DNA of 64,000 nt from positions 124,001-188,000 of IMG/VR virus record IMGVR_UViG_3300028592_000004; one strand, 5' to 3'. The notes beneath the pieces are model-generated. The model saw only the letters and a list, made by a program, of their open reading frames with translations. It was not told where the DNA came from and ran no database searches. Each line of letters starts with the position of its first letter. Position 1 is the stretch's first letter. Below are positions 41,567-64,000 of this stretch, one piece after another. The translations under genes and the position numbers were made by a program.

Positions 41567-43483
41567 TTAGAGCCCGTCCAAAACGGACGGGAGGGACTTC
41601 TTCGGTTTGAGAGGGTCGGCCTCCCAGCCCTGCGTCAGACCCTCTCGACCGAAGTTGAGGGGGTTCATCGCCATCGCCGAGGGGTAGCTCGTCCCAAAGG
41701 GATCGATCGTGTCGCCGCGGTGGACAGCCTTGAGCGTGCTCTTTTCTAGGTTCGAGCCGAGGTGCCGCGAGACAACGTCCTCGTCCTGTTCCAGGTTCGC
41801 CATTCCGCGGATCATCACCGGCGTGAACGGCGGCGGGTCGTCGTTGACGTCGATGTTCTGGATGCCAAACTCCTGCAGCTCCTTCACAACCGAGGGCCGG
41901 ATCTTCGTTCCAATCGTGTAGTGCAGGACCGGCTTCTCCAGGTACTTTCCCTTGGCACTGCCCGGGTGCATCCGGATCGTACTTGCCCGGGGTTGCCAGT
42001 TCCGTTCCAACTGCTGGTACGAGACGATGTCGTTCGGCACCCGGTCATCCAGTTCGTCGTCGAGCCGGACGTGGTTGATCAGCCCGCGTGCAAGAAGCTC
42101 GACGTTCCGGCGATGGGCGCCCATGCCCGCCTCCCGGTACGCCTGAGCAAAGGCCTTGGTGTAGTACCGCCGGCCCTCCCCGATCCCCTTGTGCTCAATG
42201 ATCTCAGCCGGGTTCGGGATCCCGTCGCTGAGGACGTCGCCAGCTTCGACTTCGTCACCCGGCTTGACCTTCACCTCGTGGCCGTGGCCGACGTAGTGGC
42301 GGTCATTGCCCACGGTGACGAAGAATCCACCCTGGGGCGCCGGGGTGACTTCGTTCACGCGGCCGTCGAGCTTCGAGATCGAAGCCCCGGACTTGAACGT
42401 CTTCGGGACCTGAACGAACTGGTCAATCAGCTTGAAGCCGGAGACAGCCTTGTCGGCACCGGCGACACCGCCGGAGTGCTTTGAGGAGAGCTGCCCCTGT
42501 GTCAGCTTTTCCGACAGGGCCTGGGCAGCGGCGAGTCCAACGAAGTCTCCCCGCCGCGGAAGGAATCCGCGTTCCCGGACGCCGACGTCGCGGCTCCAGA
42601 CGCCATCCCCGGGACCGCCGACAGTCGGCGATCGGACAAGGATTCGCTTGAAGCCCTGGTCCTGGATGTCGCGCAGCACCTTCGGCGTCAGGATCGTGTT
42701 CCGGTCGTAACCCGCGACCGGTGAGGCCAGGAAGGCGCCTTCGTTGTCGGCATCCTCTGTGTCGACCGGCAGCCCGCGGTTCCCGTGGTCGTAGTCGTCC
42801 GGATCGTCTGTCCCGACCGTCACCAGCCGGTGGTTGACCTGGTTGAGCTGCTTGGCAAGGTAGCCGGAGTCTTGCGTGGACCCCTTCGTATCGAGCACCC
42901 CTTTCCGGGCGCCGAACGTACCGGCGAAATACTCCACCGGCGACAGCCCTTCGGAGTACGACCGCAGCACAGGAATCGGAATCGGCCGGCCCTTGTGGTC
43001 GACGTACAGCAGGTCGGAGCCGCGGAGCGACTTCAGGTTCCCGGCGTTACCGCGGGCACCGGAGGCGATCTGCTGCCAGAAGGGATTGTTCTCCTCCCTG
43101 CTCTCGTCGAAGATCTTCTTCTCCATCGGCTCCCGGAAACCCATCGCCGCATCGACGATCTGTTGGGCTCGGTCGTCATCGTTCAGATCGCCCTTGGCAA
43201 GGATCTGATTGAGCTTGCCCTGAAGCTGTTGACGCATCTGCATCGCAGACGGCGAGACGAGCATGTCCTTCAGCCGGAAGGAGAAGCTGCCGGTGCTGGT
43301 CGCGGCGTCCCGTCCGATGTCGGAGAGACGCTTCGTGACCTCGCGGTACTGGTCGGGATACTTCTCCGCGAGTTCCTGGAAGACAGCGTTGAGGCCCTTC
43401 TTGTCGAAGACGGCGTTCCGACCGCGCATCCCTTCCGGCAGGGCTTGATCGATGAGTAGTCGGCCTAGCGTCGTCTTGAGCAT
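41567..43483 (-). CDS. Phage multisubunit RNA polymerase, beta' C-terminal chain
   Basis: TTLGR, SGARG, EGLSPVEYF...GARKG..DT...T.DSGYL (bridge helix), AAAQALSE..TQ..L..KH.GG (trigger loop). Confidence 0.93.
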   Translation of the reverse strand: MLKTTLGRLLIDQALPEGMRGRNAVFDKKGLNAVFQELAEKYPDQYREVTKRLSDIGRDAATSTGSFSFRLKDMLVSPSAMQMRQQLQGKLNQILAKGDLNDDDRAQQIVDAAMGFREPMEKKIFDESREENNPFWQQIASGARGNAGNLKSLRGSDLLYVDHKGRPIPIPVLRSYSEGLSPVEYFAGTFGARKGVLDTKGSTQDSGYLAKQLNQVNHRLVTVGTDDPDDYDHGNRGLPVDTEDADNEGAFLASPVAGYDRNTILTPKVLRDIQDQGFKRILVRSPTVGGPGDGVWSRDVGVRERGFLPRRGDFVGLAAAQALSEKLTQGQLSSKHSGGVAGADKAVSGFKLIDQFVQVPKTFKSGASISKLDGRVNEVTPAPQGGFFVTVGNDRHYVGHGHEVKVKPGDEVEAGDVLSDGIPNPAEIIEHKGIGEGRRYYTKAFAQAYREAGMGAHRRNVELLARGLINHVRLDDELDDRVPNDIVSYQQLERNWQPRASTIRMHPGSAKGKYLEKPVLHYTIGTKIRPSVVKELQEFGIQNIDVNDDPPPFTPVMIRGMANLEQDEDVVSRHLGSNLEKSTLKAVHRGDTIDPFGTSYPSAMAMNPLNFGREGLTQGWEADPLKPKKSLPSVLDGL

Positions 43484-44517: not shown

Positions 44518-47500
44518 TTACCGGGGATTGATAATCTCGACGTTGTCGTCCACGCCGATCTCGCCCCGGCGGTAGGCCTGTACTGCGTCTCTCACTGTAG
44601 CGAACGTCCTAGTCCGATTCGAGGTCGGCGAAGGCTTGGACGCCCGATAGAGGCCCCCAGCATACTCCTTCCCAGGCAGCTGGTGAGCGCGGAAGTTGGA
44701 GACCGCCAGCAAATTCCGGCTGGGCAGCATCTTCTCGTAGGCATCTGCGACAGCCTCGTCGCTCTGCGGAACATGGTACTGCATCGCGTCGCCGTCGAAG
44801 TCAGCGTTGAATCCGGTGACGATCGTCGGCGAGATGTGGATCGTGTCGTCCTGGATCAGTTTCGGCCGGAACGCCATCAGGTTGTACCGGTGAAGCGTCG
44901 GTGCCCGGTTGAGCACGACCGGCCGATCTTCCATCGTCCGGAGCAGCATCGTGCGGGCGCGATCGGACCGCGACGTGACAGCTCGGGCCGCGTCCATCCG
45001 ACTCATCCCGTTGCGAACCAGTCCGCGAACGATGTGCGGCTTGTAGACCTCCCACGCCTTATCTTCCGGGATCCCCACTTCGTCCATGTCGAGATCCGGG
45101 TCTGGAATGATTGTGCCGCGACCGACCGTGTCGACCACCGAGCCGATCAGCTTCTGCTGGACGAAGCCATACTTCGGCGAACCACCGAAGATCGTCTTCA
45201 GCAGTCCCTTTACCTTGCGTTCCTGGTTCTTCGGCTGAGTCGGATCCGCCAGACCCGTGAGGGCCTTGAACGAGTTGTAGACGGCCAGGCGCTCATCACC
45301 CAGGTCGTCGAACTTGCCGGCCGCATCCTTCAGGATTCCGTTCGAATCCATGATCTCCTTGTAGAGCGCGTTGGCGTCGGCCACCATCGGTAGCTTGGAG
45401 CCCTGCATGACAGACACCGGCCGGAACACCGGCGGAATGACCGGCACCTTCGTAAGCATCCAGTCCCGCGGGTGGATCCCGTGCTGCTCCGCGCTCTTGA
45501 GGTACTTCAGCTTCCGGATGGCCTCATCCCGCCGGGTCTTCTTGCCGGACGCGATATCCGCCCGAGCGTTCTCGATCATTCGCGGGAGGTTGATCGAGTC
45601 CAGGGCGTACTTGATGGCGCTCGGCCCGGTGCGGTCGTTCAGCTTCTCGCGGCCGGCGAGGATGTCGAGGAACTTGTTCTCGGTCAGGCCGAGGACGCGA
45701 CGGATCGGTTCCTCCATGACAGGCGACGGCATCGGCTCACTGAGCTTGATGAAGCTCCACCGGTTACCGCCGTGCCCGCCGGTCAACTCTGGATCGAACA
45801 GACCGCCCTTGACCGGGTTGAGCCCGCCCTTCCAGTCGACAGTGTCGGAATTGGTGATCTCGCGGTTGCCAGCGAACTCGTCGATGTCGGCGTCGCGGAG
45901 GGCCAGGGTGTTGAACCGTGTCCCGTTCCGCACCACGTTGATCCCGGAGCCGCGGAGCGTATCCACGAACTTCTTGTAGACCATCGGGACCTTCGGCATC
46001 GGCGGAGCGTGACCGCTCATGTACTGCGTCCAGTACTCCGGATGCTGCTGTCCGCGCACGACGGCAGCGTCACGCAGGAACTCCGTGGCTCCGTGGCTCA
46101 GGAGGGCGTTGGCATCCAGGAGACTCACCCGCTTGCTTCCGGTCTGACCACCCTTCGCCGGCAGCCCCTCGCTGGTGTAGCCGCCCATGCTCCGACCCTG
46201 GCCCTTCGACTCGGCCGTGTGGTGGAGCTTCATGAAGTAGCGGTTGCCGGTGAAGATCCCCGGGATCTTCCGGTTGTTCGAACTCGGGTCGATCAGGTCT
46301 TCGGTGTCGGACAGACCATTCTTCTGCAGCTCCTGCATAGCGTACTGCACAAGGTCCGGGATGTCCTTGAAGTCCTTGACGTTGTAGTGCTTGCCGGTCA
46401 TCGCGGCGATCTTGCCAAGCGTCGCCTCAACCACCTGGGCGGGGTTGGTGCGGGTGATGATCCCCAGCGGGTTGGCGAGCACTTCGTACGGCTTACCGTC
46501 TGCACCGACAGGCATCTGGCTGTCGGGGATGATCTTCGCGATGACGCCCTTGTCCCCGTAGCGGCCGGAGATCTTGTCGCCGGTCTGGGCCTGCATCACG
46601 CTCTTGACGGTGACCACGATCCCCTTGTCCGTCTTGGCGACGTCGACAACCTCTCCGGGAGAGTGGTGGTCCCAGGTCTCCGTCTGGTCAGAGAAGGACC
46701 GATCCCGGGCCTTGTGAAGTGAGTTCTTGGCCCGCTCCTTCTGCTTGGCGCCGAGGATGATCGGGTCATCCGGCTGCAGGATCGTTCCCGGCTTGACCAC
46801 GCCATCGTCATCGATCGAGTCCAGCACCTTCCGCGGGTACTTGCTCGGGAACATGCTGATGAAGTCCCGCTTCTTCGTCCGGATGTTGTCGTCCAGGTCC
46901 AGCCCGTGCTGGTACATGTGCTGACTGCTCAGCCGCTTGGCGAAGGACTCGCTGATGGCGAAGGCATCCTCAAAGTTGATCCCCTTCCAGGCGATGTAGG
47001 CCGTCCGGGCATTCCGGCCGAGGGCCACGACTCCGTTCTTGTCGGTGTAGTTCGAGTGGGCGAGGAGCTGTCCCTGACCAACGCGATCCCCGGGCTTCAC
47101 AACGGCGGTGTTGTGGAGGTAGGTCTTTCGGTTCGAGGGGTCGTGATTCCAGAGCTCGACGACTTCCTTCTTGCCGTCCGGCGTCTGAATCGTGATCTCG
47201 TCGTTGTCGACGTGGGTGACCGTCCCGTCGACCTTGCTGCGGGATGCCCCGAACATCTCGCCGTACCGGTTCTCAAAGCTGTCGTCGACGTCCTCCGGCA
47301 CGCCGGTGCGGACAAACGGAGCTTCCCCGTCGTCGAGCGAGAGGGCCTGCGTCAGCATTCGCTGGGCCATCGCCGCCCGCTGCCCCTTCATGGCCGACTT
47401 CATGGGGACCATCGTCACCATCGGAGAGAGTGTGCTCTCCATGTTCGGCACTTCGAAGTCAACCTTGTCGCGCGGCACGAACTTCATCTTGCCGCCGACG

Positions 47501-48978
47501 AGCGCCGGGACCTGGTCCTTGTAGGTCGCCATCGCGTTCGGGAAGGCGAGGACAGCCTTGGTGATCTCCTGCGGTGACTTGAAGACGGTCTGGCCGGTCC
47601 GCGCGTCCCGGAAGGGAGCGTACATACGGCCGTCCTTCCCCTTCTCCGCAGCGTAGGCGAAGCGGGAGTCGACACCGGCCTTGAGCGATTCAGGCGTGAC
47701 CAGGCTGTCGATGAAGCCGAACTGTCCAGGCTGGACGCTCCGCGCTTCGTCGGGCACCGAGTCGACGCTCGGGATCCCGCCCTCACCCAGCCGGCTGACG
47801 CGGTACATCTGCTCAATGAGCATCCCCGGGTTGATCTCTTCCCCGGGGTTCCCCAGACCGCTGTCGGTGATGGCGCTGAGCAGGCCGCTCGTCAGGATCC
47901 CGGACGGGATATGGTCCAGGTTCTTGCGGATGGTGCCCTTCCACAGCATCCGGCGGAGCATGTTCTTGTCTCGACCGAAACGCTCTGCGAGGAGATCTTC
48001 GGGGCCGAGGAGCGTCTGGAAGGCCGGGTTGTCGCGGTCGTCCGTCTCGTCTTCGCCCTTGTTGATCGCCAGCAGCTTGCGGGTGGCCGCGAGCCACGTC
48101 GGGGCGTCGACCTTGTCGAATGCCTCGCGAAGGGTCTCCTTGTTGACCTCCGGATCGAGCTTCATCTTCCGGAAGGCTTCAGCAACGGCCTGCCCGCGCA
48201 GTCCCTCGTCCGGTTCGTTGCCGCGGACCAGCCGCCGGTAGAGCTTGTCGACCGCGCCGCGATCGTTCTTCGCCATGTTGGCGGCAGCCAGCTCGGGTCC
48301 CCACGCTTCGTTCAGCTGGGACGGCGTGACACCCATTGCCCGCAGGACCGGCCACATGGGGATCTCACCTTGGGCGATCTTGAGTTTGAAGATCCCGGAC
48401 TCCGGATCCATCATCACCCGATGCGCGAGCCCCTGGCCGGGGAGCACGTTGATGTGGGACTCCAGCTCGCCGCTCTCCTTCTGGCGGGAGAACGCTCCGG
48501 ACATGAGGCGAAGCTGGTGGCCAAGCGAGTAGCGGTTCCCGCTGAGGATGAAGGCCCCGCGGTCCCCAAAGTAGGGGACGTTCGCGATTGTAGCCCGCCG
48601 TTCGGAGATCGGCTGCTGCGTGGCCAGGTCGACCAGGCGCCAGGTCCCTTTCAGCTTCCGGGACAGCGTCTTCCCGGTGAGGATGGCGTTCTTCTGGTCC
48701 TTCTTCGAGTACCGTTCCGGCCCCTCGTACGCCGGGTCGACCAGCTCCAGCCGGTGCGTCTTGCTCTCGACCGGCTGGAACTTCATCGCGGAGTTCAGCA
48801 CGTTGTCGAAGATCGACTGCCGGATGGCTGTGACGTCCCCGAAGCCTCGACGTCCGGTCGGCTGAGCGAGCGGCGGAGGAGACCAGGGAGCGGGCGCCGG
48901 AGGGGTGCCCATTTGTGAATCCAGCCCCTGCAGCAGAGGCGAGGGGCTGGGGAGAAGGCCGTCCATGAAGTCAGGCAT
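44518..48978 (-). CDS. Phage multisubunit RNA polymerase, beta + beta' N-terminal fusion (catalytic chain)
   Basis: beta motifs NFEDA, GDKISGRYGDKGVI, NPLG..TR.N..Q, YFMKLHH; beta' motifs GLFD, VPVIPP..RP, LNRAPTLHR, NADFDGD (44788-44808). Confidence 0.97.
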   Translation of the reverse strand: MPDFMDGLLPSPSPLLQGLDSQMGTPPAPAPWSPPPLAQPTGRRGFGDVTAIRQSIFDNVLNSAMKFQPVESKTHRLELVDPAYEGPERYSKKDQKNAILTGKTLSRKLKGTWRLVDLATQQPISERRATIANVPYFGDRGAFILSGNRYSLGHQLRLMSGAFSRQKESGELESHINVLPGQGLAHRVMMDPESGIFKLKIAQGEIPMWPVLRAMGVTPSQLNEAWGPELAAANMAKNDRGAVDKLYRRLVRGNEPDEGLRGQAVAEAFRKMKLDPEVNKETLREAFDKVDAPTWLAATRKLLAINKGEDETDDRDNPAFQTLLGPEDLLAERFGRDKNMLRRMLWKGTIRKNLDHIPSGILTSGLLSAITDSGLGNPGEEINPGMLIEQMYRVSRLGEGGIPSVDSVPDEARSVQPGQFGFIDSLVTPESLKAGVDSRFAYAAEKGKDGRMYAPFRDARTGQTVFKSPQEITKAVLAFPNAMATYKDQVPALVGGKMKFVPRDKVDFEVPNMESTLSPMVTMVPMKSAMKGQRAAMAQRMLTQALSLDDGEAPFVRTGVPEDVDDSFENRYGEMFGASRSKVDGTVTHVDNDEITIQTPDGKKEVVELWNHDPSNRKTYLHNTAVVKPGDRVGQGQLLAHSNYTDKNGVVALGRNARTAYIAWKGINFEDAFAISESFAKRLSSQHMYQHGLDLDDNIRTKKRDFISMFPSKYPRKVLDSIDDDGVVKPGTILQPDDPIILGAKQKERAKNSLHKARDRSFSDQTETWDHHSPGEVVDVAKTDKGIVVTVKSVMQAQTGDKISGRYGDKGVIAKIIPDSQMPVGADGKPYEVLANPLGIITRTNPAQVVEATLGKIAAMTGKHYNVKDFKDIPDLVQYAMQELQKNGLSDTEDLIDPSSNNRKIPGIFTGNRYFMKLHHTAESKGQGRSMGGYTSEGLPAKGGQTGSKRVSLLDANALLSHGATEFLRDAAVVRGQQHPEYWTQYMSGHAPPMPKVPMVYKKFVDTLRGSGINVVRNGTRFNTLALRDADIDEFAGNREITNSDTVDWKGGLNPVKGGLFDPELTGGHGGNRWSFIKLSEPMPSPVMEEPIRRVLGLTENKFLDILAGREKLNDRTGPSAIKYALDSINLPRMIENARADIASGKKTRRDEAIRKLKYLKSAEQHGIHPRDWMLTKVPVIPPVFRPVSVMQGSKLPMVADANALYKEIMDSNGILKDAAGKFDDLGDERLAVYNSFKALTGLADPTQPKNQERKVKGLLKTIFGGSPKYGFVQQKLIGSVVDTVGRGTIIPDPDLDMDEVGIPEDKAWEVYKPHIVRGLVRNGMSRMDAARAVTSRSDRARTMLLRTMEDRPVVLNRAPTLHRYNLMAFRPKLIQDDTIHISPTIVTGFNADFDGDAMQYHVPQSDEAVADAYEKMLPSRNLLAVSNFRAHQLPGKEYAGGLYRASKPSPTSNRTRTFATVRDAVQAYRRGEIGVDDNVEIINPR

Positions 48979-55825: not shown

Positions 55826-56824
55826 TCAGCTACTTCTGATCCTCCCGTTGGACCCGATCCGGAGGTTGTCGATGTTGAATTCGCCGTCCGCGAGGACTTC
55901 CACGAAGGCGAAGCCGTGGTTCCACTTATTGATCCGCGCGTACTCCGGGTAGAGCTCGCACAGGCAGCCTGTCGACCAGGTCGCAACCTCTTGGTGCTTC
56001 CAGTTTGGCTCGGAGTGCTGACTCGACCGGTGGCCGTGACCAACCAGGACCGTGTCGTTCATCCGGAGGAACGCTCCGCGGGCCATGTTGACGGGGTTCG
56101 TCAGACCCTTCGGCAGTTCGTGCCCGTGGAAGATCGGCAGGTTGCCGGCCATGATCGGCCGCTGGTCGCCGACGATCTCGATACCGTGCTTGTCCGCGTG
56201 CAGCCAGGTTTCCAGGTCCAGCAGCGGATCATCCGCTACCTCGGCGAAGTAGTTCCAGATGTAGTGGTCCCACCGCTCGTCATGGTTCCCCTTCTTCAGG
56301 ATGATCCGCGCCTTCGGGAACTCGCTGCGGAGCCACGCCAGCCCCTGACGCTGGCAGGCGATCTCTTCCTTCAGGTTCCGATCCTTGGGGTTCTTCTGGA
56401 AGCGGGAGACCGAGTACCAGTCGCCATAGTCTCCGTTGATCAGGAGGATGTCTGGCTTCCGGTCTTTGCAGTACTTCACCGCGGCGCCGAGCGCCATCTC
56501 CGAGTGGAAGGGAAAGTGGATGTCCGACAGGACGGCCAACTGGATCCCAGTCGGGAGCACGACCGGCTCCCAGGCTTCAGCCTTGCTCGGCGGCATGGTC
56601 GGCTTCGTGCCGGCCTTTCCGTTCGGCCGTGGACTCGTTGCCTCGTCACGATGCTCCTTGCCCTTGTTGCCGCGGATGGTGCGAACGTAGTCACGGCCCT
56701 GTTCGATTGAGATGCCGTACTCCTTTGCGAGGCGCCTGGCGAGCGTTCGCGAGGCTGCATCGGGATACTCTCTACACAGCTGCTCTGCAGCCAGTCGGAT
56801 TGGCCCTTTCGGTGGTTTGCTCAT
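55826..56824 (-). CDS. Calcineurin-like metallophosphoesterase with N-terminal HTH-like segment
   Basis: SDIH, GDYGD, GNHD, HGH, GHGH motifs. Confidence 0.9.
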   Translation of the reverse strand: MSKPPKGPIRLAAEQLCREYPDAASRTLARRLAKEYGISIEQGRDYVRTIRGNKGKEHRDEATSPRPNGKAGTKPTMPPSKAEAWEPVVLPTGIQLAVLSDIHFPFHSEMALGAAVKYCKDRKPDILLINGDYGDWYSVSRFQKNPKDRNLKEEIACQRQGLAWLRSEFPKARIILKKGNHDERWDHYIWNYFAEVADDPLLDLETWLHADKHGIEIVGDQRPIMAGNLPIFHGHELPKGLTNPVNMARGAFLRMNDTVLVGHGHRSSQHSEPNWKHQEVATWSTGCLCELYPEYARINKWNHGFAFVEVLADGEFNIDNLRIGSNGRIRSS

Positions 56825-57135
56825 TCGGAATCCCTCCTGTATCCGAGTCGGTACAAAATACGGGCCAGGTCGGTCGCCACAGTGGCGCACCATTCCTCCG
56901 ACCTGTGCCAGTCTGCGGCGTGCAGGACCTCATGGATGATGACGTCCAGCTCTCGCTCGCCCGAGATGGCGGTCGAGATCACGATCTCACGCTTCTTGAG
57001 ATCGGAAGAAGAGAATGGGTGCTGGGTCTTGGCCTCACCCGTCGTGAACCCATCGAGATTACGGAGATACTTGCGGACGAACCGCCAGCGCTTCCCAAAA
57101 ATGATGACCTGCTTCAGCACTCGTCCACAATCCAT
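56821..57135 (-). CDS. Small HExxH (minimal zincin-like) protein
   Basis: IIHEVLHA...SEE; ATGA coupling to the phosphoesterase. Confidence 0.65.
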   Translation of the reverse strand: MDCGRVLKQVIIFGKRWRFVRKYLRNLDGFTTGEAKTQHPFSSSDLKKREIVISTAISGERELDVIIHEVLHAADWHRSEEWCATVATDLARILYRLGYRRDSE

Positions 57136-57157: not shown

Positions 57158-59512
57158 TCAGTCGAAGGCGGCGCTGATGGCACCGGTCAACAACCCGCCC
57201 CAGAGGCCCGCTTGCTGCAGGCCCACCTGGGCCTCGGGATTGAGGCCCGCTAGGGCTCCCATTGTTTTACCCAGAAGCAACCCACCGAGAAATCCCCCAG
57301 CCCCGCTGAAGGCAACGGTCTTGGCGATGTCGAAAGGCGAAACGGAGGGCTTTCCACCGCTCCCCAGCGAGGCGGCGACGAGCGTACCGCTCGCGGCTGC
57401 AGCGACTTGCGCTGGCGTGCCACCGAAGTTCGAGCCGGGCCGTGCGGCGTCATTCCAGATCACACTCCCGAAGGCGTCGACGGGGATATTCGACAGGAAC
57501 ATTGTCCCCGTCATGTCCTCCGCGGCGTTGGTTTTCGTCCGACCGGACCAGCCGAAGTCGTCGGCCGGCATCTCGGAACCCATCCCAGACAGGTTCGAGT
57601 TCCACCCGTGCGGCGTCTTGAGACCCCAGTACAAACCCGGAGCAGCGCCCAGGCCGGCGCCCAGGAGCCCCAGCGTGCGTCGCATCCGCTTGCCGGAGAA
57701 GTACTGCTCCGGAAGCATGTTGTCCATCAGATAGCCGGCACCGTAGCCCAGGCCGGCTCCCAGAGCTCCACCAACCAGCGTGCTGGAGAGCGGGCTCGGC
57801 CCACCGAGCGGCTTGTTGACCTTCGACCACATGTCCGAAATCCCCTCGAACATCGCGCCCTGCTTGAACATCGTCCAGCCCGGCTCGTCGGCCGGGATCG
57901 TACTGACCAGGCCCTTCTCCGGATGGACGAACCAGCAGCCCTCTGCCTCCGCATACTTCACGACCAGCGGCGCCGCCTGCTCGTACAGAGCTCGCACCCG
58001 GGCGGGGACTTCCCGCCAACTGAGGTGTTCCAGCTCGTCGATCGCGCTCGCTTCCTTCTGGTTGCGCTGTCCGATCTCCTTCAACAGATCCCGGAACTTC
58101 ATGTTGATCTCTTCCTTCTGCTCGGCCAGACGCCGCAGGTGATAGTCCGCTCCAGACCGATCATCGGTCAGGCCGAGGAACCGTTCCAGAGAGGATGGCT
58201 CCCGAGGGCGGGACAGGAAGTTCTGGATGAGGACGTTCCGCTGGTCTGTCGGAAGGTAGCCGTGACTATCGTGACGGATCCCGCGGCCTTTGACCTGAGT
58301 ATCGCGAGCCTCGTTCCAGTGCGGATCCAGGATCTGCATCAGCCGAGTGCCACGGAGCGAGATCCCTTCCGAGCCGGCGGGACCGGCGAGCAGCACCGGA
58401 GCCAACCCGTTGTTGTAGCTCTCAATAATCCGCTTCCGCTCCAGGTCGGCGATACCGCCGTGGAAGAGGCCGTAGGGGATCTTGTCTCGCTCCAGGGCCG
58501 CGGCGTAGGGACGGAGGCCGGCGTCAATGAAGTTCGAGTAGACGAGCGCTCGGCTCTTCGGGTTCTTCGCCATCTGCTCCTTGAGGAGCTTATAGGCCAG
58601 CTGCAGCTTGGGCGAGGAATCGAACGCGGCCAACGGGTCCGGGTTCGACATGAACGGGAACATCGACAGCCCGATCTGTCGCGGTCCGGTCAGGAAGGAC
58701 GTCATCCGCTTCCGTTCGAGGGCGGAGAGCGGGAAGTTGTTCTGCAGCTTGTAGCGCAGGACCCAGGGGATCGAGTTCCAGAACGACCGATACGCGGTCG
58801 TCTGCTCGTCCGACATGTCAACTTCGTGCATCTCGTCTGTGCGATCCACGAGCGGCTTATCGGGAGCGTGGTAGTCGACGTGGCCCGCCAGCAGATCTTC
58901 CAGCCGGCCGACGTTCTTCGGCTCCATCACCTGGCCGGGCGTGACACCGAACAACGAGGCGAAGAAACCCGGGCGAACCGTCTTCTGCTTGATGAACTGG
59001 TGTGTGAACGCGTCCGGCGTGATCCGCTCGCCGGTCAGGATCGACATCGGCGCCGCGAGATCGGACGGGTGATTGACGATCGGCGAGCCCGAGAGGAGGT
59101 AAACGTGCTTGGCCTTGTTCGCCAGGTCCGTCACTGCCTGCGTCCGCTGAGACTCAGGGTTCCGGATCCGGTGAGCCTCATCGACGATCAGAGTGTCCGC
59201 GGCCGGGGCCTTGCCCGCCGTCGCGCCCTCGTAGGACACAACGTTGCCCATCAGCGAGCCGTCAGTGAACTTGGCCTGCTCCTTCGCAAAGTTGGGACGC
59301 AGTGCCGCTGGCACGATAGCCGTGTACGGCTTGCCGGCGTTCTCTGCCGCAGCGATCGAGGCCAGAGTCTTCCCGCTCCCCACGTCGTGGAAGAGGAGCA
59401 TGCGGGACTCTTCGTCCTTCCCGGTCTGGGCGATCCGCTTCTGTTGAGGCTGCAGCTCGACGCCCGGCAGGAGGGCCGCGATCTTCAACTGGTCAACGAA
59501 GTCGGCGTCCAT
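57158..59512 (-). CDS. SF2 (SNF2-like) helicase/translocase fused to a C-terminal glycine-zipper region
   Basis: GSGKT, DEAH, SGSP, EGISL, Q..GRGIR; C-terminal GGALGAGLGYGAG and similar segments. Confidence 0.85.
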   Translation of the reverse strand: MDADFVDQLKIAALLPGVELQPQQKRIAQTGKDEESRMLLFHDVGSGKTLASIAAAENAGKPYTAIVPAALRPNFAKEQAKFTDGSLMGNVVSYEGATAGKAPAADTLIVDEAHRIRNPESQRTQAVTDLANKAKHVYLLSGSPIVNHPSDLAAPMSILTGERITPDAFTHQFIKQKTVRPGFFASLFGVTPGQVMEPKNVGRLEDLLAGHVDYHAPDKPLVDRTDEMHEVDMSDEQTTAYRSFWNSIPWVLRYKLQNNFPLSALERKRMTSFLTGPRQIGLSMFPFMSNPDPLAAFDSSPKLQLAYKLLKEQMAKNPKSRALVYSNFIDAGLRPYAAALERDKIPYGLFHGGIADLERKRIIESYNNGLAPVLLAGPAGSEGISLRGTRLMQILDPHWNEARDTQVKGRGIRHDSHGYLPTDQRNVLIQNFLSRPREPSSLERFLGLTDDRSGADYHLRRLAEQKEEINMKFRDLLKEIGQRNQKEASAIDELEHLSWREVPARVRALYEQAAPLVVKYAEAEGCWFVHPEKGLVSTIPADEPGWTMFKQGAMFEGISDMWSKVNKPLGGPSPLSSTLVGGALGAGLGYGAGYLMDNMLPEQYFSGKRMRRTLGLLGAGLGAAPGLYWGLKTPHGWNSNLSGMGSEMPADDFGWSGRTKTNAAEDMTGTMFLSNIPVDAFGSVIWNDAARPGSNFGGTPAQVAAAASGTLVAASLGSGGKPSVSPFDIAKTVAFSGAGGFLGGLLLGKTMGALAGLNPEAQVGLQQAGLWGGLLTGAISAAFD

Positions 59513-60189
59513 GCCAGCACCCTCTCCAGCTCCATCAGAGGCTTGGCCGAGGACGTTTTCTCCGCGGCCCAAATGCAACTCGGACAGTCGTGGTCGACGA
59601 CGTGCCGCTCATTGTGGGAGCAGCGACACCGGGTCTCGTGCCCGCACTTATGTTGAAAGATCCCGTGCGCTGACGCTGCCTTCGCGACGTCGCTGTTCTC
59701 CTGCAGGATCTTCTTCTTCCGGACCGCGCAGGTGATGTGGAAATCGTACTCGTTGTTCTTGGGGCGTGCTGACAGCCCGTATGACTTGCGAAGTTTCTCC
59801 AGATCCGGAGACTTCACTTTCAGGAACCAGACCCGCGACATTTCCTTCCAGCTCGTTGGCGCGACCTCTTGCAGCGCCCCAAGCTGGTAGTGGAACTCCC
59901 TTCCCCGCTCGACGATGACGTCGATGCCGCCAATCTGCTCGATCTCTTCCGGACGCATGACGCTGATATGCGCATTCAGCGGTTCATTGTTGTGTGGCCC
60001 GGGCAATTCTGCGCCAAGGACCCGCATCGCCGAGAAGACACCCCTGACTAGATCATTCGGGACTGTCAGCAACAGCCATCCACTCTGAGACGCAATCAGC
60101 CGGCCCGCCAAAACGGGGGCATCGACCGCGTCACCCGCGGACTTCAAGAGGTAGCCGGACGCTTCGCCTAGTTGAAAGTCTGACGTCAC
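59485..60189 (-). CDS. 2H phosphoesterase family protein with C-terminal Cys/His cluster
   Basis: Two HxS/T motifs (AHISV, FHITC) about 80 aa apart; GTG start after GAGGA. Confidence 0.75.
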   Translation of the reverse strand: MTSDFQLGEASGYLLKSAGDAVDAPVLAGRLIASQSGWLLLTVPNDLVRGVFSAMRVLGAELPGPHNNEPLNAHISVMRPEEIEQIGGIDVIVERGREFHYQLGALQEVAPTSWKEMSRVWFLKVKSPDLEKLRKSYGLSARPKNNEYDFHITCAVRKKKILQENSDVAKAASAHGIFQHKCGHETRCRCSHNERHVVDHDCPSCIWAAEKTSSAKPLMELERVLAWTPTSLTS

Positions 60190-60430
60190 GGACCTTTCCT
60201 CGTAGAAGTCCAGGTCACGTCTCCCCGGATCCCCTCCCGGGGTCCTGACGGAAAATGAATTTCCGCCTCGCAACGGCATCGCAGGCACATCCGTTGCTCC
60301 TCCATAGTCTCCGCAGTTTCCCATGAGACCGTTCCTGGGAGCCCTCGCAATCCTCGCGTGAAGCTCCCTCCTAACCGGGCAGTGCCATGCCCAGACGTGA
60401 CGCGTCTCACCTTAACCGAAATCCGTACTG
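60190..60430 (-). ncRNA. Candidate structured GGA-rich RNA (CsrB/RsmZ-like sponge or structured leader)
   Basis: Largest intergenic gap; eight consecutive hairpins; 17 GGA triplets by manual count. Confidence 0.55.
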
Positions 60431-60434
60431 GTCA

Positions 60435-60809
60435 CTACTCATCTTCATTGAGATTGGGGACTTCCAGGAAAACACGGCTGACGGATTCAAATGTGATCCG
60501 GATCCAGGTTGGGGTCAGATCTTCGAGGACTTGTGTTCGGTGTTCGACCAACCTGTACACGCAGCGCTCAACTGCGTTGTACAGGTTGTCCTCGGACCGA
60601 ATTGCCTGCAGTCGGTTGACAACTGGGCTCAAACGTCGCATCAATCCCAGAAAGATCTTCTGCAGACGCCTGCCTTCGAGGTCCGACTCGATGGCAAGGC
60701 GGGACAGAGGCTCTCCGCGCTCAACGCATTCCATCACCGCCGCGGTGATGGACATTGCCAACGTTTGCCAGATCAGCCATTCCTGGGTGATCGGCAGCTT
60801 CCTAGCCAT
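60435..60809 (-). CDS. Hypothetical protein
   Basis: Start MARKLP overlaps the caspase stop; 124 aa. Confidence 0.5.
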   Translation of the reverse strand: MARKLPITQEWLIWQTLAMSITAAVMECVERGEPLSRLAIESDLEGRRLQKIFLGLMRRLSPVVNRLQAIRSEDNLYNAVERCVYRLVEHRTQVLEDLTPTWIRITFESVSRVFLEVPNLNEDE

Positions 60810-61605
60810 TGGAGAAGACTTCCCACAGCTGTGCGTACTTCGGTCCCGAGAGGACCGGAGTCTGCGGGCACTCATCACTCGGCAGGTGATTTCGGACGAG
60901 ACGGAACAGATCCCGGTAGGTCGCCTGCGGAGGCAGCTTCGGGATCAGCTGCTGCAGGTAGTACGAGAAGGCACCCTTCGGGCGCCCGTCGAACTCCGTG
61001 TCGAAGGCGAACTCCTTGTCGCTGCAAGCGGACATGCAGACGACCCCCTGCGTCATCCACGCCAGGGGCATGTGCTCTTGCTTGAGGGCGGTATCGATCG
61101 ACTTCTGCAGCCCCTTGAACTGCGGCAGATCGTACGGAGGCAGGAAGCGTTTCTTCACCCGCTTGCCGGGCTTCTTCTTCGGAGCGGACCGCATGACCGT
61201 TCCGGAGTGGCAGCTGTCGGCGATCAGAGCTACCCGAGCTTCCGGCTTGCGGTTCTGGTCGAACAGGAGGTACAGCTCATCGTCCAGAATCAGCTCGTTG
61301 TCGAGGTCGTAGGGGCACCAGGCTTCGTCTCGACCGTCGATCTCATCGCCATCCAAGTCGGGCACCCAGGTCCCGTGGCCGGCGAAGGTGATGATGGCCA
61401 ACTCGTTCGGCCCGGTGGCCTGCAGGAGTTCCGTCAGACCCTTCAGGATGTTGGCGCGGGTGGCCTCCTTTTCGAGCAGAACGTTCTGAACCTGGACACC
61501 TCGCTCGACAAGCAGGGTGGCCCAGTCCTGAGCGTCGTTGACAGCCCCGTAGAGCTCCATCTCCGAGTTGGCGTAGTTGATGCCGATGCACAGTGCACGC
61601 TTCAT
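60802..61605 (-). CDS. Metacaspase / caspase-family (C14) peptidase
   Basis: KRALCIGINY, L.G.VND, FAGHG (His), DSCHSG (Cys), GAFS, QTP. Confidence 0.92.
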   Translation of the reverse strand: MKRALCIGINYANSEMELYGAVNDAQDWATLLVERGVQVQNVLLEKEATRANILKGLTELLQATGPNELAIITFAGHGTWVPDLDGDEIDGRDEAWCPYDLDNELILDDELYLLFDQNRKPEARVALIADSCHSGTVMRSAPKKKPGKRVKKRFLPPYDLPQFKGLQKSIDTALKQEHMPLAWMTQGVVCMSACSDKEFAFDTEFDGRPKGAFSYYLQQLIPKLPPQATYRDLFRLVRNHLPSDECPQTPVLSGPKYAQLWEVFSNG

Positions 61606-61606
61606 G

Positions 61607-61624
61607 ACGTTCCTCCTTGAACGT
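61607..61624 (-). promoter_or_regulatory. CsrA/RsmA-type hairpin at the caspase RBS
   Basis: ACGTTC-AAGGAG-GAACGT. Confidence 0.65.
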
Positions 61625-62487
61625 TAGCGGACGGCCGTCAGCTGATCCGGGCTGACATAGAACCGTCCAAGGCCCCGTCGTCGCTGATCTTCGTGAAACA
61701 GGGCGTGTTCGCAGTCACCGCCACGATAGGCCGAGACTGAGAACGCGTCCATCGTGTAGACGGCCATTCCTCCGAACGCCGACAACACCGGGATCAGCGG
61801 GGCGCCACGGTGGATCCGGTAGCCGCGGACAGCCGGGTCTCCCGGCTTGTGCGGTTCTGGATGCTTGAGGCTCCGCCAGGCCCACACGTCGAAGTTGGCG
61901 AATCCTGTCGGGCTCGTCCAGCTGGGTTCTGCCTGCAGTCCAAACGAGGCACAGGCATCCCAGTCCGACTCCGCGAAGGTCCGGCAAACCCCCGGCAGTG
62001 AAAAGGCCAGGGTGTCGAAGTCGAGCACGATGACGTAGTCGAACTCGGAGAAGTGGCTGAGCACGTATTCGCGGTAGACGTTCCGGCAGGAGGCCAGGCC
62101 GCAGGAACGGGCCACGCTTCGCTTCGACGGGAACCGATGCTGACCGAGCTTGTGACACATCGTGTGCCACCGGTCATCCTCAAAGGATTCGGCCTGCAGC
62201 AGGTCCACCGTGTTGTCGTGGGAGTCGTTCTCGTAGACAACGACCGTTCCTTCCCGGAAGCATTCCAGCAGGGCCGTCACCTGCGGGATCAGCGTCGGAA
62301 GAATGTGGCCCACGTCACGAGCCAGGCCGCAGATAGCGACCCGGCTACTCCGCATCTTGTGCAGTCCGATCTGGACCCGTTCCACCAGAGAGTGCTGAAC
62401 CGGGAAGTTTCGATCCAAGATCAGACCGAACCGTTCCGCCGTCAGCGGTGCCTGCTCTGCAGGCGCAGTCTCGCTGTCCATAGCCAC
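61624..62487 (-). CDS. GT-A fold glycosyltransferase (CAP59/GT69-like)
   Basis: ICGLARD, YENDS.DNT, LA.CRN, VLDFD (DxD), SAFGG..VY, CEH. Confidence 0.75.
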   Translation of the reverse strand: MAMDSETAPAEQAPLTAERFGLILDRNFPVQHSLVERVQIGLHKMRSSRVAICGLARDVGHILPTLIPQVTALLECFREGTVVVYENDSHDNTVDLLQAESFEDDRWHTMCHKLGQHRFPSKRSVARSCGLASCRNVYREYVLSHFSEFDYVIVLDFDTLAFSLPGVCRTFAESDWDACASFGLQAEPSWTSPTGFANFDVWAWRSLKHPEPHKPGDPAVRGYRIHRGAPLIPVLSAFGGMAVYTMDAFSVSAYRGGDCEHALFHEDQRRRGLGRFYVSPDQLTAVR

Positions 62488-62517
62488 CTCCGCAGCAGGT
62501 ATTCAATACCCGCGGAT

Positions 62518-63225
62518 TCAATTCCGCTCGCCGACCTTCTGGAAGACATACGTCTCGATGTCTTCGCGGCCGGCCGCAGCCTCCAGGCGATGATGCACGC
62601 GGCACACCAGATCGTACCGCCGGAGCCAGGACCGCAGGCCATCGTCGGTGAAGTAGTAGTAGTGCTCGTTCGGCCGGTAGTGCTTGGACTCGCGAATCCG
62701 ATCGAGGTTCTTGAAGATCGGGATCGAGGTGACGAGATAGTCCCCGGGGCGGATCCGATCGAAGAGGAGGTGCGGCTCGGGGATGTGCTCCAGAACGTCC
62801 CACAGAGTCCAGGCGACGACGCCCTTTGGCGGCAGATGGGTGTAGATGTCGAGCCACATCCGCCGCTCTTCAAGCCATGCCTTGGCCTTGGCGTTCACGT
62901 CGTAGCCATAGAGCACAAGACCGGGGACCTTCGTGGCCTCGAACTGAGCGTGGCGCCGCTGATCCAGCGCTTCGAGGAAGGCCCCGTCGCCAATGCCGAT
63001 GTCGATCACCGTGTAGGGATTGAGACGCTCGACGGTGTTGATCCGGGCTTCCTGCAGCTTGGTGAAGATCTCCAGGTCACGGTAGACGGTGTACTTGTCG
63101 AAGTAGGCGTCGTCGTAAGGGACGCTCTTCCGCATGTCCGTCTGGTAGGCAAGGCCCGGGTAATCGCAGATCGAGAGGTCTGCACCCGACAGCCGTGCCG
63201 GGTAGTGAGCAATCACGCGATCCAT
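62518..63225 (-). CDS. Class I SAM-dependent methyltransferase
   Basis: IDIGIGDG (motif I), GYDVN, WDVLEHI..P; start MDRVIA. Confidence 0.85.
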   Translation of the reverse strand: MDRVIAHYPARLSGADLSICDYPGLAYQTDMRKSVPYDDAYFDKYTVYRDLEIFTKLQEARINTVERLNPYTVIDIGIGDGAFLEALDQRRHAQFEATKVPGLVLYGYDVNAKAKAWLEERRMWLDIYTHLPPKGVVAWTLWDVLEHIPEPHLLFDRIRPGDYLVTSIPIFKNLDRIRESKHYRPNEHYYYFTDDGLRSWLRRYDLVCRVHHRLEAAAGREDIETYVFQKVGERN

Positions 63226-64000
63226 CACGTCATCCTGTTGAGAAGTCTGGCCAGGTGCTCTCCGACGAAGTCGAAGGATTGGTGAGGAGCGTAATACACG
63301 TCCTGCCACTTGTACAGATGCGTGTTCACGGATCGTATGGCCATCTGATCCGGTCGCAGGACTTTCGCCGCGGACACCGACAGCGAACTGTCGATGCCGA
63401 TGTAGTAGGAAGCCTTCCGCAAGAGCTTGATCCCCTGCAGCAAGGTTGTCTGACCGCTCAGGTCGACGAAGTTCGGATAGGGTGGGATCGCCTCGGACTT
63501 GTCATTCAGGACGTAGCCCGTGACCCCTTTGAAGTTGAGCCAGGAGGAAAGGCAGGCCCAGTCGTCCTTCGAAAAGTCACGACGACGATCGCGCTTATCT
63601 GAGGAGTAGGGGCAGATGATGGCATAGCGCTCGTGGTTGACCAGACCCTTCGTCTCAATCGAGCGGAGGCCGATCTGACTGCCAATGTACTGACGGAAGC
63701 CGCGACGAATCGCGTGAAACTGGACGAGGATGCTCCAGTCGTCTGCCGCCATGACCTCCTGCGGCACCTTGTGGCCTTGGAGACGCTGCTCAGCAACGAA
63801 GTCCGGGAGCGAGTGGTAGCACCAACGCTCGTCCCAGTTCTCCCACACGGAGCGGTGTTCGAGGACCCGCGGCAGTGCGAGCTTGAGGATCTCGCGGACT
63901 GGTTCTTCCTTGCGGGTGCAGTAGAAGACGCGACGGATTCGCTCGCGTTCGGGGTCCGTCATGAAGGCGTCGAGCGCCAGGACATCGCCGATTCCGCCGG
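63225..64000 (-). CDS. GT9 (heptosyltransferase-like, GT-B) glycosyltransferase, 5' end outside the window
   Basis: GGIGDVL at the window edge; VDLSGQTTL...ASYYIGIDS. Confidence 0.75.
   Translation of the reverse strand, partial: GGIGDVLALDAFMTDPERERIRRVFYCTRKEEPVREILKLALPRVLEHRSVWENWDERWCYHSLPDFVAEQRLQGHKVPQEVMAADDWSILVQFHAIRRGFRQYIGSQIGLRSIETKGLVNHERYAIICPYSSDKRDRRRDFSKDDWACLSSWLNFKGVTGYVLNDKSEAIPPYPNFVDLSGQTTLLQGIKLLRKASYYIGIDSSLSVSAAKVLRPDQMAIRSVNTHLYKWQDVYYAPHQSFDFVGEHLARLLNRMT

What the first reader, a model, noticed from the sequence alone, without database searches (positions are those of the whole stretch)
59485..60189. 2H phosphoesterase flanked by K-x-A sites: possible injected anti-defence enzyme
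Seen: an HIS/HIT 2H domain between LKSA and AKAA, followed by a C..C.C...C..C cluster. Established: phage Acb1 is a 2H enzyme that degrades CBASS cyclic nucleotides; other 2H enzymes process RNA 2',3'-cyclic phosphates. Inference: delivered with the genome to counter nucleotide signalling or RNA damage at entry.
Basis: partly seen in the sequence, partly recalled or inferred. Interest (0 to 1): 0.6.

Follow-up and report, generated by a model that had tools for sequence, protein, structure and literature searches.

The report
Phage 2H phosphoesterase, detached polyvalent-protein module
A soil jumbo phage carries an intact two-histidine phosphoesterase that, in related uncultivated phages, is the first domain of giant multi-enzyme proteins rich in nucleic-acid end-repair activities; it is a new member of a known family, and delivery with the virion is not shown.

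Summary
Window 59485-60189 (minus strand) is a 234-aa gene with a GTG start and a good ribosome-binding site. It has HIS and HIT motifs, a Lys-x-Ala on each side, and a C-x5-C-x-C-x11-C-x2-C cluster.

It belongs to Pfam PF22547 (2H-SAK). The modelled core (pLDDT 94-98) matches only 2H enzymes in the PDB. Acb1, LigT/CPDase, Usb1 and viral PDEs tie at Z about 6-7, so the subfamily is not resolved.

The family has 850 cluster representatives and is almost entirely from uncultivated phages. The 2H unit usually sits at the N-terminus of proteins of 400-2913 aa. Its fusion partners include InPase, HAD, LigD 3'-phosphoesterase, ATP-dependent ligase, SET, NUDIX, C39 peptidase and an SNF2 ATPase about 50% identical to the adjacent window gene.

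The most likely function is 2',3'-cyclic-phosphate end healing within a polyvalent-protein-type module.

Both flanking lysines are about 96% conserved. However, stand-alone homologues end about 4 residues after the second lysine, which argues against cleavage sites.

A natural soil variant lacks the Cys cluster in frame.

Injection and Acb1-like activity remain untested.

The parts
59485..60189 (-). 2H-SAK phosphoesterase gene, 234 aa plus stop (P0002)
   Evidence: Translation. Pfam PF22547 at 44.5 bits, cut-off 27. 6 of 6 natural substitutions fall at third codon positions.
60193..60200 (-). Shine-Dalgarno-like AGGAAAGG, 3 nt before the GTG start
   Evidence: Read from the sequence. Homologue N-termini align with this start.
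60145..60180 (-). Family-specific N-terminal helix (residues 4-15)
   Evidence: AF2 models, pLDDT about 77-81. Part of the conserved unit in nearly all homologues. No PDB 2H chain aligns before residue 35.
60136..60144 (-). K16-S-A, the upstream K-x-A
   Evidence: K in 49 of 52 and in 86 of 90 homologues.
59716..60111 (-). 2H catalytic core (residues 27-158)
   Evidence: pLDDT 94-98. The top 21 of 48,161 PDB representatives are all 2H enzymes, Z 6.8-4.1, then a drop to 3.1 or less.
59962..59970 (-). First catalytic motif, H74-I-S76
   Evidence: H74 is invariant in alignments A1 and A3.
59731..59739 (-). Second catalytic motif, H151-I-T153
   Evidence: H151 is invariant.
59674..59682 (-). K170-A-A, the downstream K-x-A and end of the conserved unit
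   Evidence: K in 48 of 52 and in 86 of 90 homologues. Stand-alone homologues end a median of 4 residues later.
59530..59673 (-). Optional Cys/His module (residues 173-220). The five Cys lie at 59575-59646.
   Evidence: The pattern C-x4-6-C-x-C-x8-14-C-x2-C also occurs in P0011, P0086, P0125, P0140, P0151, P0193 and P0217. A soil contig replaces 59530-59672 by 17 nt, in frame.
57158..59512 (-). Downstream gene. Its ATG at 59510-59512 overlaps the 2H stop by 28 nt. It combines an SNF2 ATPase (residues 10-485; 58058-59485) with a glycine-zipper-like C-terminal domain (residues 491-783; 57164-58042).
   Evidence: Pfam SNF2-rel_dom and Helicase_C. About 50% identical SNF2 domains are fused to the 2H domain in P0224, P0214, P0226, P0201, P0248 and P0171. 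The C-terminal domain is fused to 2H in P0123 and P0228. It is also a separate gene next to or near the 2H gene in at least 10 loci.
60190..60434 (-). 245-nt intergenic spacer upstream of the 2H gene, with stem-loops
   Evidence: Weak terminator-like site at 60276-60263. RNA fold z = -1.9, unremarkable. No Rfam match.
55826..56893 (-). Calcineurin-like metallophosphoesterase, two genes downstream on the same strand; a candidate phosphatase partner
   Evidence: Pfam Metallophos E = 4e-7. No PDB sequence relative. The link to the 2H gene is positional only.

Best explanation
The gene encodes a catalytically intact 2H (two-histidine) phosphoesterase of the 2H-SAK family (PF22547). It is the free-standing form of a unit of about 170 residues: an N-terminal helix, the 2H core and a short Lys-bearing tail. 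In most relatives this unit is the N-terminal domain of large phage multi-enzyme (polyvalent-type) proteins.

In this phage the module has been split off. It carries an optional small zinc-binding Cys/His insert and is translationally coupled to the next gene. That gene is an SNF2 ATPase fused to a glycine-zipper-like domain. Both of its parts are fused to the 2H unit in other phages.

The most likely chemistry is metal-independent hydrolysis of 2',3'-cyclic phosphate ends on RNA or nucleotides. His74 and His151 would act as general acid and base. This is an end-healing step that prepares broken RNA for dephosphorylation and ligation, countering host ribonuclease defences.

Shown: gene, frame, motifs, fold, family, fusion network and purifying selection.

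Inferred: substrate, physiological role, timing and location.
For: **Family and fold.**
- Pfam 2H-SAK scores above its cut-off.
- H74 and H151 are invariant.
- The AF2 core has pLDDT 94-98.
- Only 2H enzymes top both VIA searches.
- In BFVD the named hits ahead of Acb1 (rank 17) are 'RNA 2',3'-cyclic phosphodiesterase', '2'-5' RNA ligase superfamily', a phosphatase and 'SAK 2H' proteins; the top-ranked hits are uncharacterised.

**Family size and architecture.**
- The exhaustive search gives 850 representatives, 627 at E<=1e-10.
- In the listed hits, the 2H unit starts within about 56 residues of the N-terminus in nearly all, with three clear exceptions.
- Of the 126 newly listed representatives, median length is 570 aa and the maximum is 2913 aa.

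**Same-polypeptide partners among 245 family proteins (lower bounds).**
- InPase 15, HAD 14, SET 9, LigD 3'-phosphoesterase 8, C39 peptidase 8.
- ATP-dependent ligase 7, DUF5661 7, NUDIX 6, SNF2 6, P-loop kinase 2.
- Pfam confirmed these partners in loci L002, L004, L007, L010, L011, L013, L021 and L038.
- PDB sequence search confirmed the LigD 3'-phosphoesterase domain in L010 and L024.

**Neighbours and own genome.**
- A Ro60/TROVE gene lies near the 2H gene (within 1-4 kb) in L004, L025 and L029. One is also present in the own genome.
- An ATP-dependent ligase in the own genome is homologous to the ligase 1 kb from the 2H gene in L039.

**Selection.** All six substitutions in the gene fall at third codon positions; five are synonymous.
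Against: - No member of this subfamily has been assayed. There is no sequence-detectable relative in the PDB.
- This phage lacks an Rnl2-type RNA ligase, RtcB, LigD_N, HAD-PNKP, InPase and a clear P-loop polynucleotide kinase. A complete healing-and-sealing pathway is therefore not evident. T4 Rnl1-type ligase was not searched.
- The ligases fused in relatives are of the DNA-ligase/LigD type, so the repaired polymer could be DNA with ribo- or phosphate-blocked ends rather than RNA.
- The ThpR extended motifs are not matched exactly.
- Structure cannot separate this reading from Acb1-like or Usb1-like activity.
Confidence: 0.5

Rival explanations
1. Acb1-like counter-signalling enzyme. It would cleave cyclic oligonucleotide second messengers (CBASS cGAMP or cA3, type III CRISPR cA4 or cA6) or 2'-5' oligoadenylate, silencing abortive-infection defences.
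For: - Acb1 is the top structural match: Z 7.1 (rmsd 3.5, 109 aa) and Z 6.8 (rmsd 3.3, 105 aa).
- Like Acb1, stand-alone members end in a short, low-confidence C-terminal tail that could act as a lid (Acb1 lid in PMC9117128).
- Iyer et al. 2017 proposed this role for 2H domains of polyvalent proteins.
Against: - Acb1's Z ties within 1 unit with CPDase, LigT, Usb1, ns2 and the BCSR5 PDE.
- There is no sequence similarity to Acb1 by phmmer or by family profile.
- In BFVD, Acb1 proteins rank only 17th and lower.
- The fusion partners are end-repair enzymes, not sponges or other signal-degrading enzymes.
- Acb1's stacking residues (Y12, W74, F107, W147) could not be mapped.
Confidence: 0.2
2. Virion-packaged, injected effector, with the two K-x-A acting as protease sites. 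The N-terminal helix would be a targeting or pro-peptide removed at K16. K170 would separate the 2H unit from downstream modules. The metacaspase-like peptidase encoded just upstream, or a head protease, would do the cutting.
For: - Both lysines are about 96% conserved and lie outside the compact core.
- The natural deletion of the Cys module begins right after K170-A-A.
- Relatives are polyvalent-type proteins, with C39 peptidase domains in 8 of them.
- In at least 8 relatives the 2H unit is fused to a helical region. In L008, L024 and P0157 this region is directly homologous to window ORF 12990-16406.
- That ORF lies between the tail sheath and the baseplate wedge genes.
- The upstream gene is metacaspase-like. 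Metacaspases cut after Lys or Arg (textbook knowledge, not tested here).
Against: - Forty of 90 stand-alone proteins end 3 or fewer residues after K170, so the lysine is conserved where nothing could be released.
- K16 is retained in proteins with 2-7 residues before it.
- Beyond the two flanks there are 8 strict-motif sites against about 6.5 expected.
- No other ORF in the genome has the leader motif near its N-terminus.
- A C14 peptidase lies near the 2H gene in only 1 of 37 other loci.
- The gene sits about 43 kb from the tail module, beside helicase and transferase genes.
- No proteomic data exist, because the phage is uncultivated.
Confidence: 0.15
3. Offensive RNase or exoribonuclease (Usb1-like) that trims or cleaves host RNAs and leaves cyclic phosphate ends.
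For: - Usb1 structures are among the tied top matches, Z about 6.
- Iyer et al. 2017 listed this possibility.
Against: - Fusion with phosphatases and ligases suggests mending rather than making breaks.
- There is no specific Usb1 sequence signal.
Confidence: 0.1

Closest known systems
Pfam PF22547, 2H-SAK ('Swiss Army Knife' 2H phosphoesterase domain)
   Same: Scores above the curated cut-off (44.5 against 27 bits). It has two H-x-S/T motifs. Relatives are multi-domain proteins with HAD, kinase and ligase-type partners.
   Different: Here the domain is a stand-alone gene with an added Cys/His module. The Pfam model covers only residues 67-160 of the 234-aa protein, so the N-terminal helix and the Lys tail lie outside it. 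No member of the family has been tested experimentally.
Phage polyvalent proteins (Iyer et al. 2017, PMC5512222)
   Same: Relatives combine 2H with InPase, NUDIX, GNAT, SWI2/SNF2 and peptidase domains in one polypeptide of up to 2913 aa. These are the same domain families described there.
   Different: - That paper found its polyvalent 2H versions never linked to RNA ligases. Here, LigD-PE plus ATP-dependent ligase modules are fused or adjacent.
- No MuF, portal or zincin domains were seen.
- The window protein is a split-off single enzyme, and packaging is unproven.
ThpR/LigT and Trl1-type RNA 2',3'-cyclic phosphodiesterases
   Same: Same fold and catalytic histidines (Z 5.5-6.5). In Trl1 the 2H CPDase is fused to a kinase and a ligase, as in some relatives here.
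   Different: ThpR's extended motifs are HxTxxF and HxTxxR. Here they are HISVMR and HITCAVR. There is no Pfam LigT_PEase hit and no sequence hit to any solved LigT.
Acb1 (phage anti-CBASS nuclease, PDB 7T26/7T27)
   Same: Compact phage 2H enzyme and the best structural match, by a small margin. Both have a short flexible C-terminal tail.
   Different: There is no sequence relation. The first motif is HxS, not HxT. An N-terminal extension of about 34 residues is absent from Acb1. The genomic associations differ. Activity is untested.

Membership tests
2H phosphoesterase superfamily | Two H-x-S/T motifs | tested here: met
   H74-I-S76 and H151-I-T153. Both His are invariant in 52- and 91-sequence alignments.
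2H phosphoesterase superfamily | 2H fold | tested here: met
   The model core has pLDDT 94-98. The top 21 of 48,161 PDB representatives are all 2H enzymes (Z 6.8-4.1). The next, unrelated hit has Z 3.1. The same result came from pdb_via.
2H phosphoesterase superfamily | Metal-independent phosphodiesterase activity | not testable with these tools
   Needs an enzyme assay.
Pfam PF22547 2H-SAK | Score above the gathering threshold | tested here: met
   44.5 bits against a cut-off of 27, E = 2e-11. It is the only copy in the 229-kb genome.
ThpR/LigT subfamily | Extended motifs HxTxxF and HxTxxR (PMC4201822) | tested here: not met
   The first motif is HISVMR (R, not F, at +5). The second is HITCAVR (R at +6). 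There is no LigT_PEase Pfam hit.
Acb1 | Sequence relation to Acb1 proteins | tested here: not met
   No hit to 7T26 or 7T27 at E<=10 with the protein or with the family profile.
Acb1 | Nucleobase-stacking residues and closing C-terminal lid; cleavage of 3'3'-cGAMP and cA3 | not testable with these tools
Only a low-confidence C-terminal tail is seen. An assay is needed.
Polyvalent proteins (Iyer 2017) | Several unrelated enzymatic domains in one polypeptide of a phage or plasmid | tested here: not met
   The window protein has only the 2H unit plus a small Cys module. Relatives do meet the criterion. The window gene is therefore a solo counterpart, not a polyvalent protein itself.
Polyvalent proteins (Iyer 2017) | Packaged in the virion and delivered with the DNA | not testable with these tools
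   Evidence is indirect only: fusion to a region homologous to tail-module ORF 12990-16406.
RNA healing-and-sealing pathway (Trl1 / Pnkp-Rnl type) | Cyclic phosphodiesterase plus 5'-kinase, phosphatase and ligase in the same genome | tested here: inconclusive
   Own genome:
- An ATP-dependent DNA-ligase-type enzyme is present.
- A Metallophos gene lies nearby.
- Ro60/TROVE is present.
- No Rnl2, RtcB, LigD_N, HAD_PNKP or InPase was found, and no AAA_33 above threshold.
- T4 Rnl1-type ligase was not searched.

The most novel reading that the evidence does not exclude
The two family-wide conserved lysines mark proteolytic maturation sites. The adjacent metacaspase-like peptidase, from a family specific for Lys/Arg at P1, would remove the N-terminal helix. 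It would also free the 2H unit from its downstream module. This would define a phage-encoded metacaspase-driven maturation system for packaged polyvalent effectors.
Probability: 0.06. Interest if true: 0.75.

Novelty: new member of a known kind. Interest (0 to 1): 0.4.

Why it matters
The family is large: 850 cluster representatives at 50% identity. It is almost exclusive to uncultivated large phages, and no member has been characterised. It is absent from 50,697 deposited phage genomes.

Its fusion network links a 2H enzyme to LigD-type phosphoesterase and ligase, HAD, kinase, InPase and SNF2 modules. This suggests a phage-borne nucleic-acid end-repair toolkit. That differs from what was reported for polyvalent-protein 2H domains in 2017.

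The small stand-alone version in this window is a convenient form for biochemistry. It could be used to settle whether such enzymes mend RNA, destroy immune signals, or both.

Tried and rejected
**Searches that found nothing**
- tblastn of the 2H protein and of the 1138-aa ORF against 50,697 GenBank phages gave no match. blastn of the locus also gave none.
- phmmer and the family profile against PDB sequences gave nothing relevant.
- There were no Rfam families and no tRNAs in the window.
- No sigma-70-like promoter was found upstream, and the spacer fold is unremarkable.

**K-x-A and protease tests**
- The strict K-x-A border motif in multi-domain relatives is not enriched beyond the two flanks.
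- The leader motif is absent from the N-termini of the other ORFs called in the genome.
- Caspase co-occurrence is limited to one other locus.

**Neighbouring genes**
- The glycine-zipper domain has no Pfam or PHROG family. The Atlas search gave only weak structural hints.
- Complex prediction of the 2H unit with that domain returned no verdict. It is not evidence either way.
- The genes upstream of the polyvalent gene in L010 gave no annotated phage match. The structural-module context of the fused relatives therefore stays open.

**Tools and literature**
- The 'atlas' fold library was not available.
- Paper searches for the origin of the name 'SAK' and for the BCSR5 phosphodiesterase found nothing. 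From memory, unverified here, the SAK name comes from Burroughs & Aravind 2016 on RNA repair systems.
- No RNA-seq run holds this phage, so expression timing could not be examined.
Full report
**Source and setting.** The window is bases 124001-188000 of a 229,210-bp IMG/VR virus record that CheckV rates as complete. It has 63% G+C. The DNA occurs in several soil metagenomes and in no RNA run. The window carries tail sheath and baseplate wedge genes, plus large multisubunit-RNA-polymerase-like genes. It is therefore a jumbo contractile-tailed phage. Nothing in 50,697 deposited phage genomes resembles the locus or the protein.

**The observation.**
- The minus-strand ORF 59485-60189 encodes 234 aa.
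- The GTG start at 60189 is preceded by AGGAAAGG. It coincides with the N-termini of close homologues.
- The longer ATG and database versions (279 and 267 aa) add unconserved residues. They also run through a terminator-like hairpin.
- The protein contains AHISV and FHITC, plus L-K16-S-A and A-K170-A-A.
- It also contains C182-x5-C188-x-C190-x11-C202-x2-C205.
- Two K-x-A in one sequence are not unusual (shuffle mean 1.24). The two positions are nevertheless conserved across the family.
- Contigs from other soil samples differ from the window at six positions in the gene. All six are third codon positions: five synonymous and one D129E.
- The neighbouring helicase shows 16 of 17 third-position changes.
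- The frame is therefore real and under purifying selection.

**What it is.**
- Pfam assigns PF22547 (2H-SAK) above its cut-off.
- AlphaFold models give a confident core: residues 27-158 at pLDDT 94-98. The N-terminal helix (4-15) scores about 80 and the C-terminal tail scores 58-67.
- An exhaustive structural comparison with 48,161 PDB representatives puts 21 2H phosphoesterases on top (Z 6.8-4.1). It then drops to unrelated folds at Z 3.1 or less. A second look at the Foldseek candidates agrees.
- The fold is therefore certain, but the subfamily is not resolved. These all lie within one Z unit of each other: Acb1 (Z 6.8-7.1), Deinococcus CPDase, LigT-like proteins, the BCSR5 phage PDE, Usb1, a poxvirus cGAMP PDE and coronavirus ns2.
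- No solved structure is detectable by sequence, even with a family profile.
- ThpR's extended motifs HxTxxF and HxTxxR are not reproduced. Here they read HISVMR and HITCAVR.

**The family.**
- A word-indexed search found 228 relatives at 45-64% identity.
- An exhaustive HMMER scan of 1.84 billion cluster representatives found 850 relatives, 627 of them at E<=1e-10.
- The matched unit almost always spans query residues about 5-175.
- In the listed hits it starts within about 56 residues of the N-terminus of the target in nearly all, with three clear exceptions.
- Of the 126 newly listed representatives, 92 are 400 aa or longer, 32 are 800 aa or longer, and the longest has 2913 aa.
- Thirty-four loci were recovered from viral contigs, many of 100-250 kb.
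- Only three loci came from 185,579 species genomes. All three are on large MAG contigs that share phage genes with the viral loci.
- The family is therefore essentially one of uncultivated large phages.

**Fusion and neighbourhood network.** Pfam scans of relatives show the following architectures.

| Locus or protein | Architecture |
|---|---|
| L002 | 2H + GNAT + HAD |
| L004 | 2H + NUDIX + DUF5661 |
| L013 | 2H + LigD 3'-phosphoesterase |
| L010 (over 2240 aa) | 2H ... GerD ... LigD-PE ... ligase OB |
| L008 | 2H + SET + long helical region |
| L038 | 2H + InPase |
| P0018, P0022 | 2H + HAD |
| P0007 | 2H + C39 peptidase |

Where the 2H gene is solo, the next gene carries partner domains:
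- NUDIX + P-loop kinase in L003;
- InPase + GNAT + LigD-PE in L021;
- InPase + HAD-PNKP in L011.

LigD-PE plus ATP-dependent ligase proteins follow the 2H gene directly in L007 and lie about 1.5 kb downstream of it in L004.

LigD-PE domains in L010 and L024 were confirmed against solved LigD-PE structures.

A tally with phmmer over 245 family proteins gives lower bounds for partners in the same polypeptide.

| Partner | Count |
|---|---|
| InPase | 15 |
| HAD | 14 |
| SET | 9 |
| LigD-PE | 8 |
| C39 peptidase | 8 |
| Long helical region | 8 |
| ATP-dependent ligase | 7 |
| DUF5661 | 7 |
| NUDIX | 6 |
| SNF2 | 6 |
| P-loop kinase | 2 |
| GNAT | 2 |

A Ro60/TROVE gene lies near the 2H gene (within 1-4 kb) in L004, L025 and L029.

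The recurrent theme is processing and sealing of broken nucleic-acid ends. The steps would be cyclic phosphodiesterase, phosphatases, kinase, ligase, and pyrophosphatase.

This contrasts with the 2017 survey of polyvalent proteins. There, 2H domains were never seen with RNA ligases and were proposed to be RNases or signal degraders.

**The window's arrangement is a split version of these fusions.**
- The 2H stop overlaps by 28 nt the ATG of the next gene (57158-59512). That ATG has its own GGAG-type ribosome-binding site.
- Residues 10-485 of that protein form an SNF2 ATPase. It is about 50% identical to SNF2 domains that share a polypeptide with the 2H unit in P0224, P0214, P0226, P0201, P0248 and P0171.
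- Its C-terminal 300 residues are a glycine-zipper-like, probably membrane-inserting, domain.
- That domain is fused to 2H in P0123 and P0228.
- It is also encoded by a separate gene directly after the 2H gene in L006, L015, L024 and L038, and within a few genes in at least six more loci.
- Several further downstream genes are syntenic with L006, L013, L015 and L016.

**The Cys/His cluster.**
- The same pattern, C-x4-6-C-x-C-x8-14-C-x2-C, follows the 2H unit or lies deeper in larger proteins. It occurs in P0011, P0086, P0125, P0140, P0151, P0193 and P0217.
- It is probably a small zinc-binding module. It was not confidently modelled.
- One soil contig (depth 10, about 96% identical) replaces window 59530-59672 by 17 nt.
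- This removes residues 173-220 in frame and leaves ...A-K-A-A-(6 residues)-LERVLAW....
- The module is therefore dispensable in nature, and its upstream border is exactly the K170-A-A tail.

**Are the K-x-A sites cleavage sites?**

For:
- the lysines are conserved;
- they lie outside the compact core;
- module borders fall there;
- peptidase domains occur in relatives;
- the gene just upstream (60802-61605) is metacaspase-like, and that family cuts after basic residues (textbook knowledge).

Against:
- among 90 stand-alone homologues, 40 end within 3 residues after K170 and 53 within 6 (median 4). The lysine is thus kept where cleavage would release nothing;
- K16 is kept in proteins with only 2-7 residues before it;
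- extra strict-motif sites in multi-domain relatives number 8, against about 6.5 expected;
- no other ORF of the genome has the leader motif near its N-terminus;
- a C14 peptidase accompanies the 2H gene in only one other locus.

The simpler reading is that the N-terminal helix and the Lys-bearing tail are integral parts of this 2H subfamily. They may form a substrate-binding lid like the C-terminal lid of Acb1. This reading is untested.

**Is it injected?** There is no direct evidence. The indirect support is as follows.
- The relatives fit the polyvalent-protein class, which was predicted, but not shown for these proteins, to be packaged.
- At least eight relatives fuse the 2H unit to a helical region. 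In L008 this region is homologous to window ORF 12990-16406 at 26% identity over 710 residues (E = 1e-55). L024 and P0157 also match that ORF directly.
- That ORF lies between the sheath and baseplate genes.
- In a distant subgroup (L028, L030, L032-L034) the 2H gene lies three genes after the large terminase.

Against this:
- the window gene sits 43 kb from the tail module, among helicase, phosphoesterase, peptidase and transferase genes;
- the own genome shows no evident complete repair pathway. It has a DNA-ligase-type enzyme and Ro60, but no Rnl2, RtcB, LigD-PE, HAD-PNKP, InPase or clear kinase. T4 Rnl1-type ligase was not searched.

**Verdict.** This is a real, intact, selected 2H phosphoesterase gene. 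It is a new member of a known Pfam family and the solo counterpart of a widespread phage polyvalent-protein module. The best-supported function is cyclic-phosphate end healing in a counter-defence repair context (confidence 0.5). Acb1-like signal degradation (0.2), virion delivery with K-x-A processing (0.15) and an offensive RNase role (0.1) remain open. No alternative genetic code was used, and no step needed referral.

Noticed in passing
window 60802-61605 (-): Metacaspase-like C14 peptidase gene in a jumbo phage. Pfam Peptidase_C14 E = 1e-24. The closest solved relatives are GSU0716 and yeast and plant metacaspases. A homologue lies about 4 kb from the 2H gene in L031.
   Followed up: partly
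window 60435-60808 (-): A 124-aa ORF whose ATG overlaps the metacaspase stop (ATGGCTAG), which suggests translational coupling. It fills most of what looked like a 600-nt gap. Function unknown.
   Followed up: no
window 57158-59512 (-), residues 491-783: An SNF2 ATPase fused to a glycine-zipper-like, probably membrane-inserting, domain. That domain is a conserved stand-alone neighbour of 2H or polyvalent genes in at least 10 loci. It has no Pfam or PHROG family.
   Followed up: partly
window 12990-16406 (-): A 1138-aa ORF in the tail module with no Pfam or PHROG hit. Its first 680 residues are homologous to the helical part of 2H-containing polyvalent proteins (L008, L024, P0157). It may be a tape-measure-like or ejected protein.
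   Followed up: partly
window 59530-59672: A natural in-frame variant in another soil sample (run X4) replaces 143 nt by 17 nt. This deletes the whole Cys/His module of the 2H protein.
   Followed up: yes
window 41567-43483 and 44518-48978 (-): Large genes matching phage multisubunit RNA polymerase beta-type PHROGs. One is 1486 aa. A sigma-factor-like ORF lies at 9353-10102.
   Followed up: no
genome 202649-203659 (outside the window; L042-L044): A Ro60/TROVE RNA-binding protein gene (545-aa frame, 134 bits). Homologues lie near the 2H gene in L004, L025 and L029. No Y-RNA-like partner was looked for.
   Followed up: partly
window 61624-63962 (-): A run of glycosyltransferase-like and methyltransferase genes upstream of the metacaspase. 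The 61624-62487 protein has a homologue 3.5 kb upstream of the 2H gene in L039.
   Followed up: no
window 59485-60324: The public gene call for this protein (267 aa, P0003) starts upstream of the likely GTG at 60189. It adds 33 unconserved residues.
   Followed up: yes
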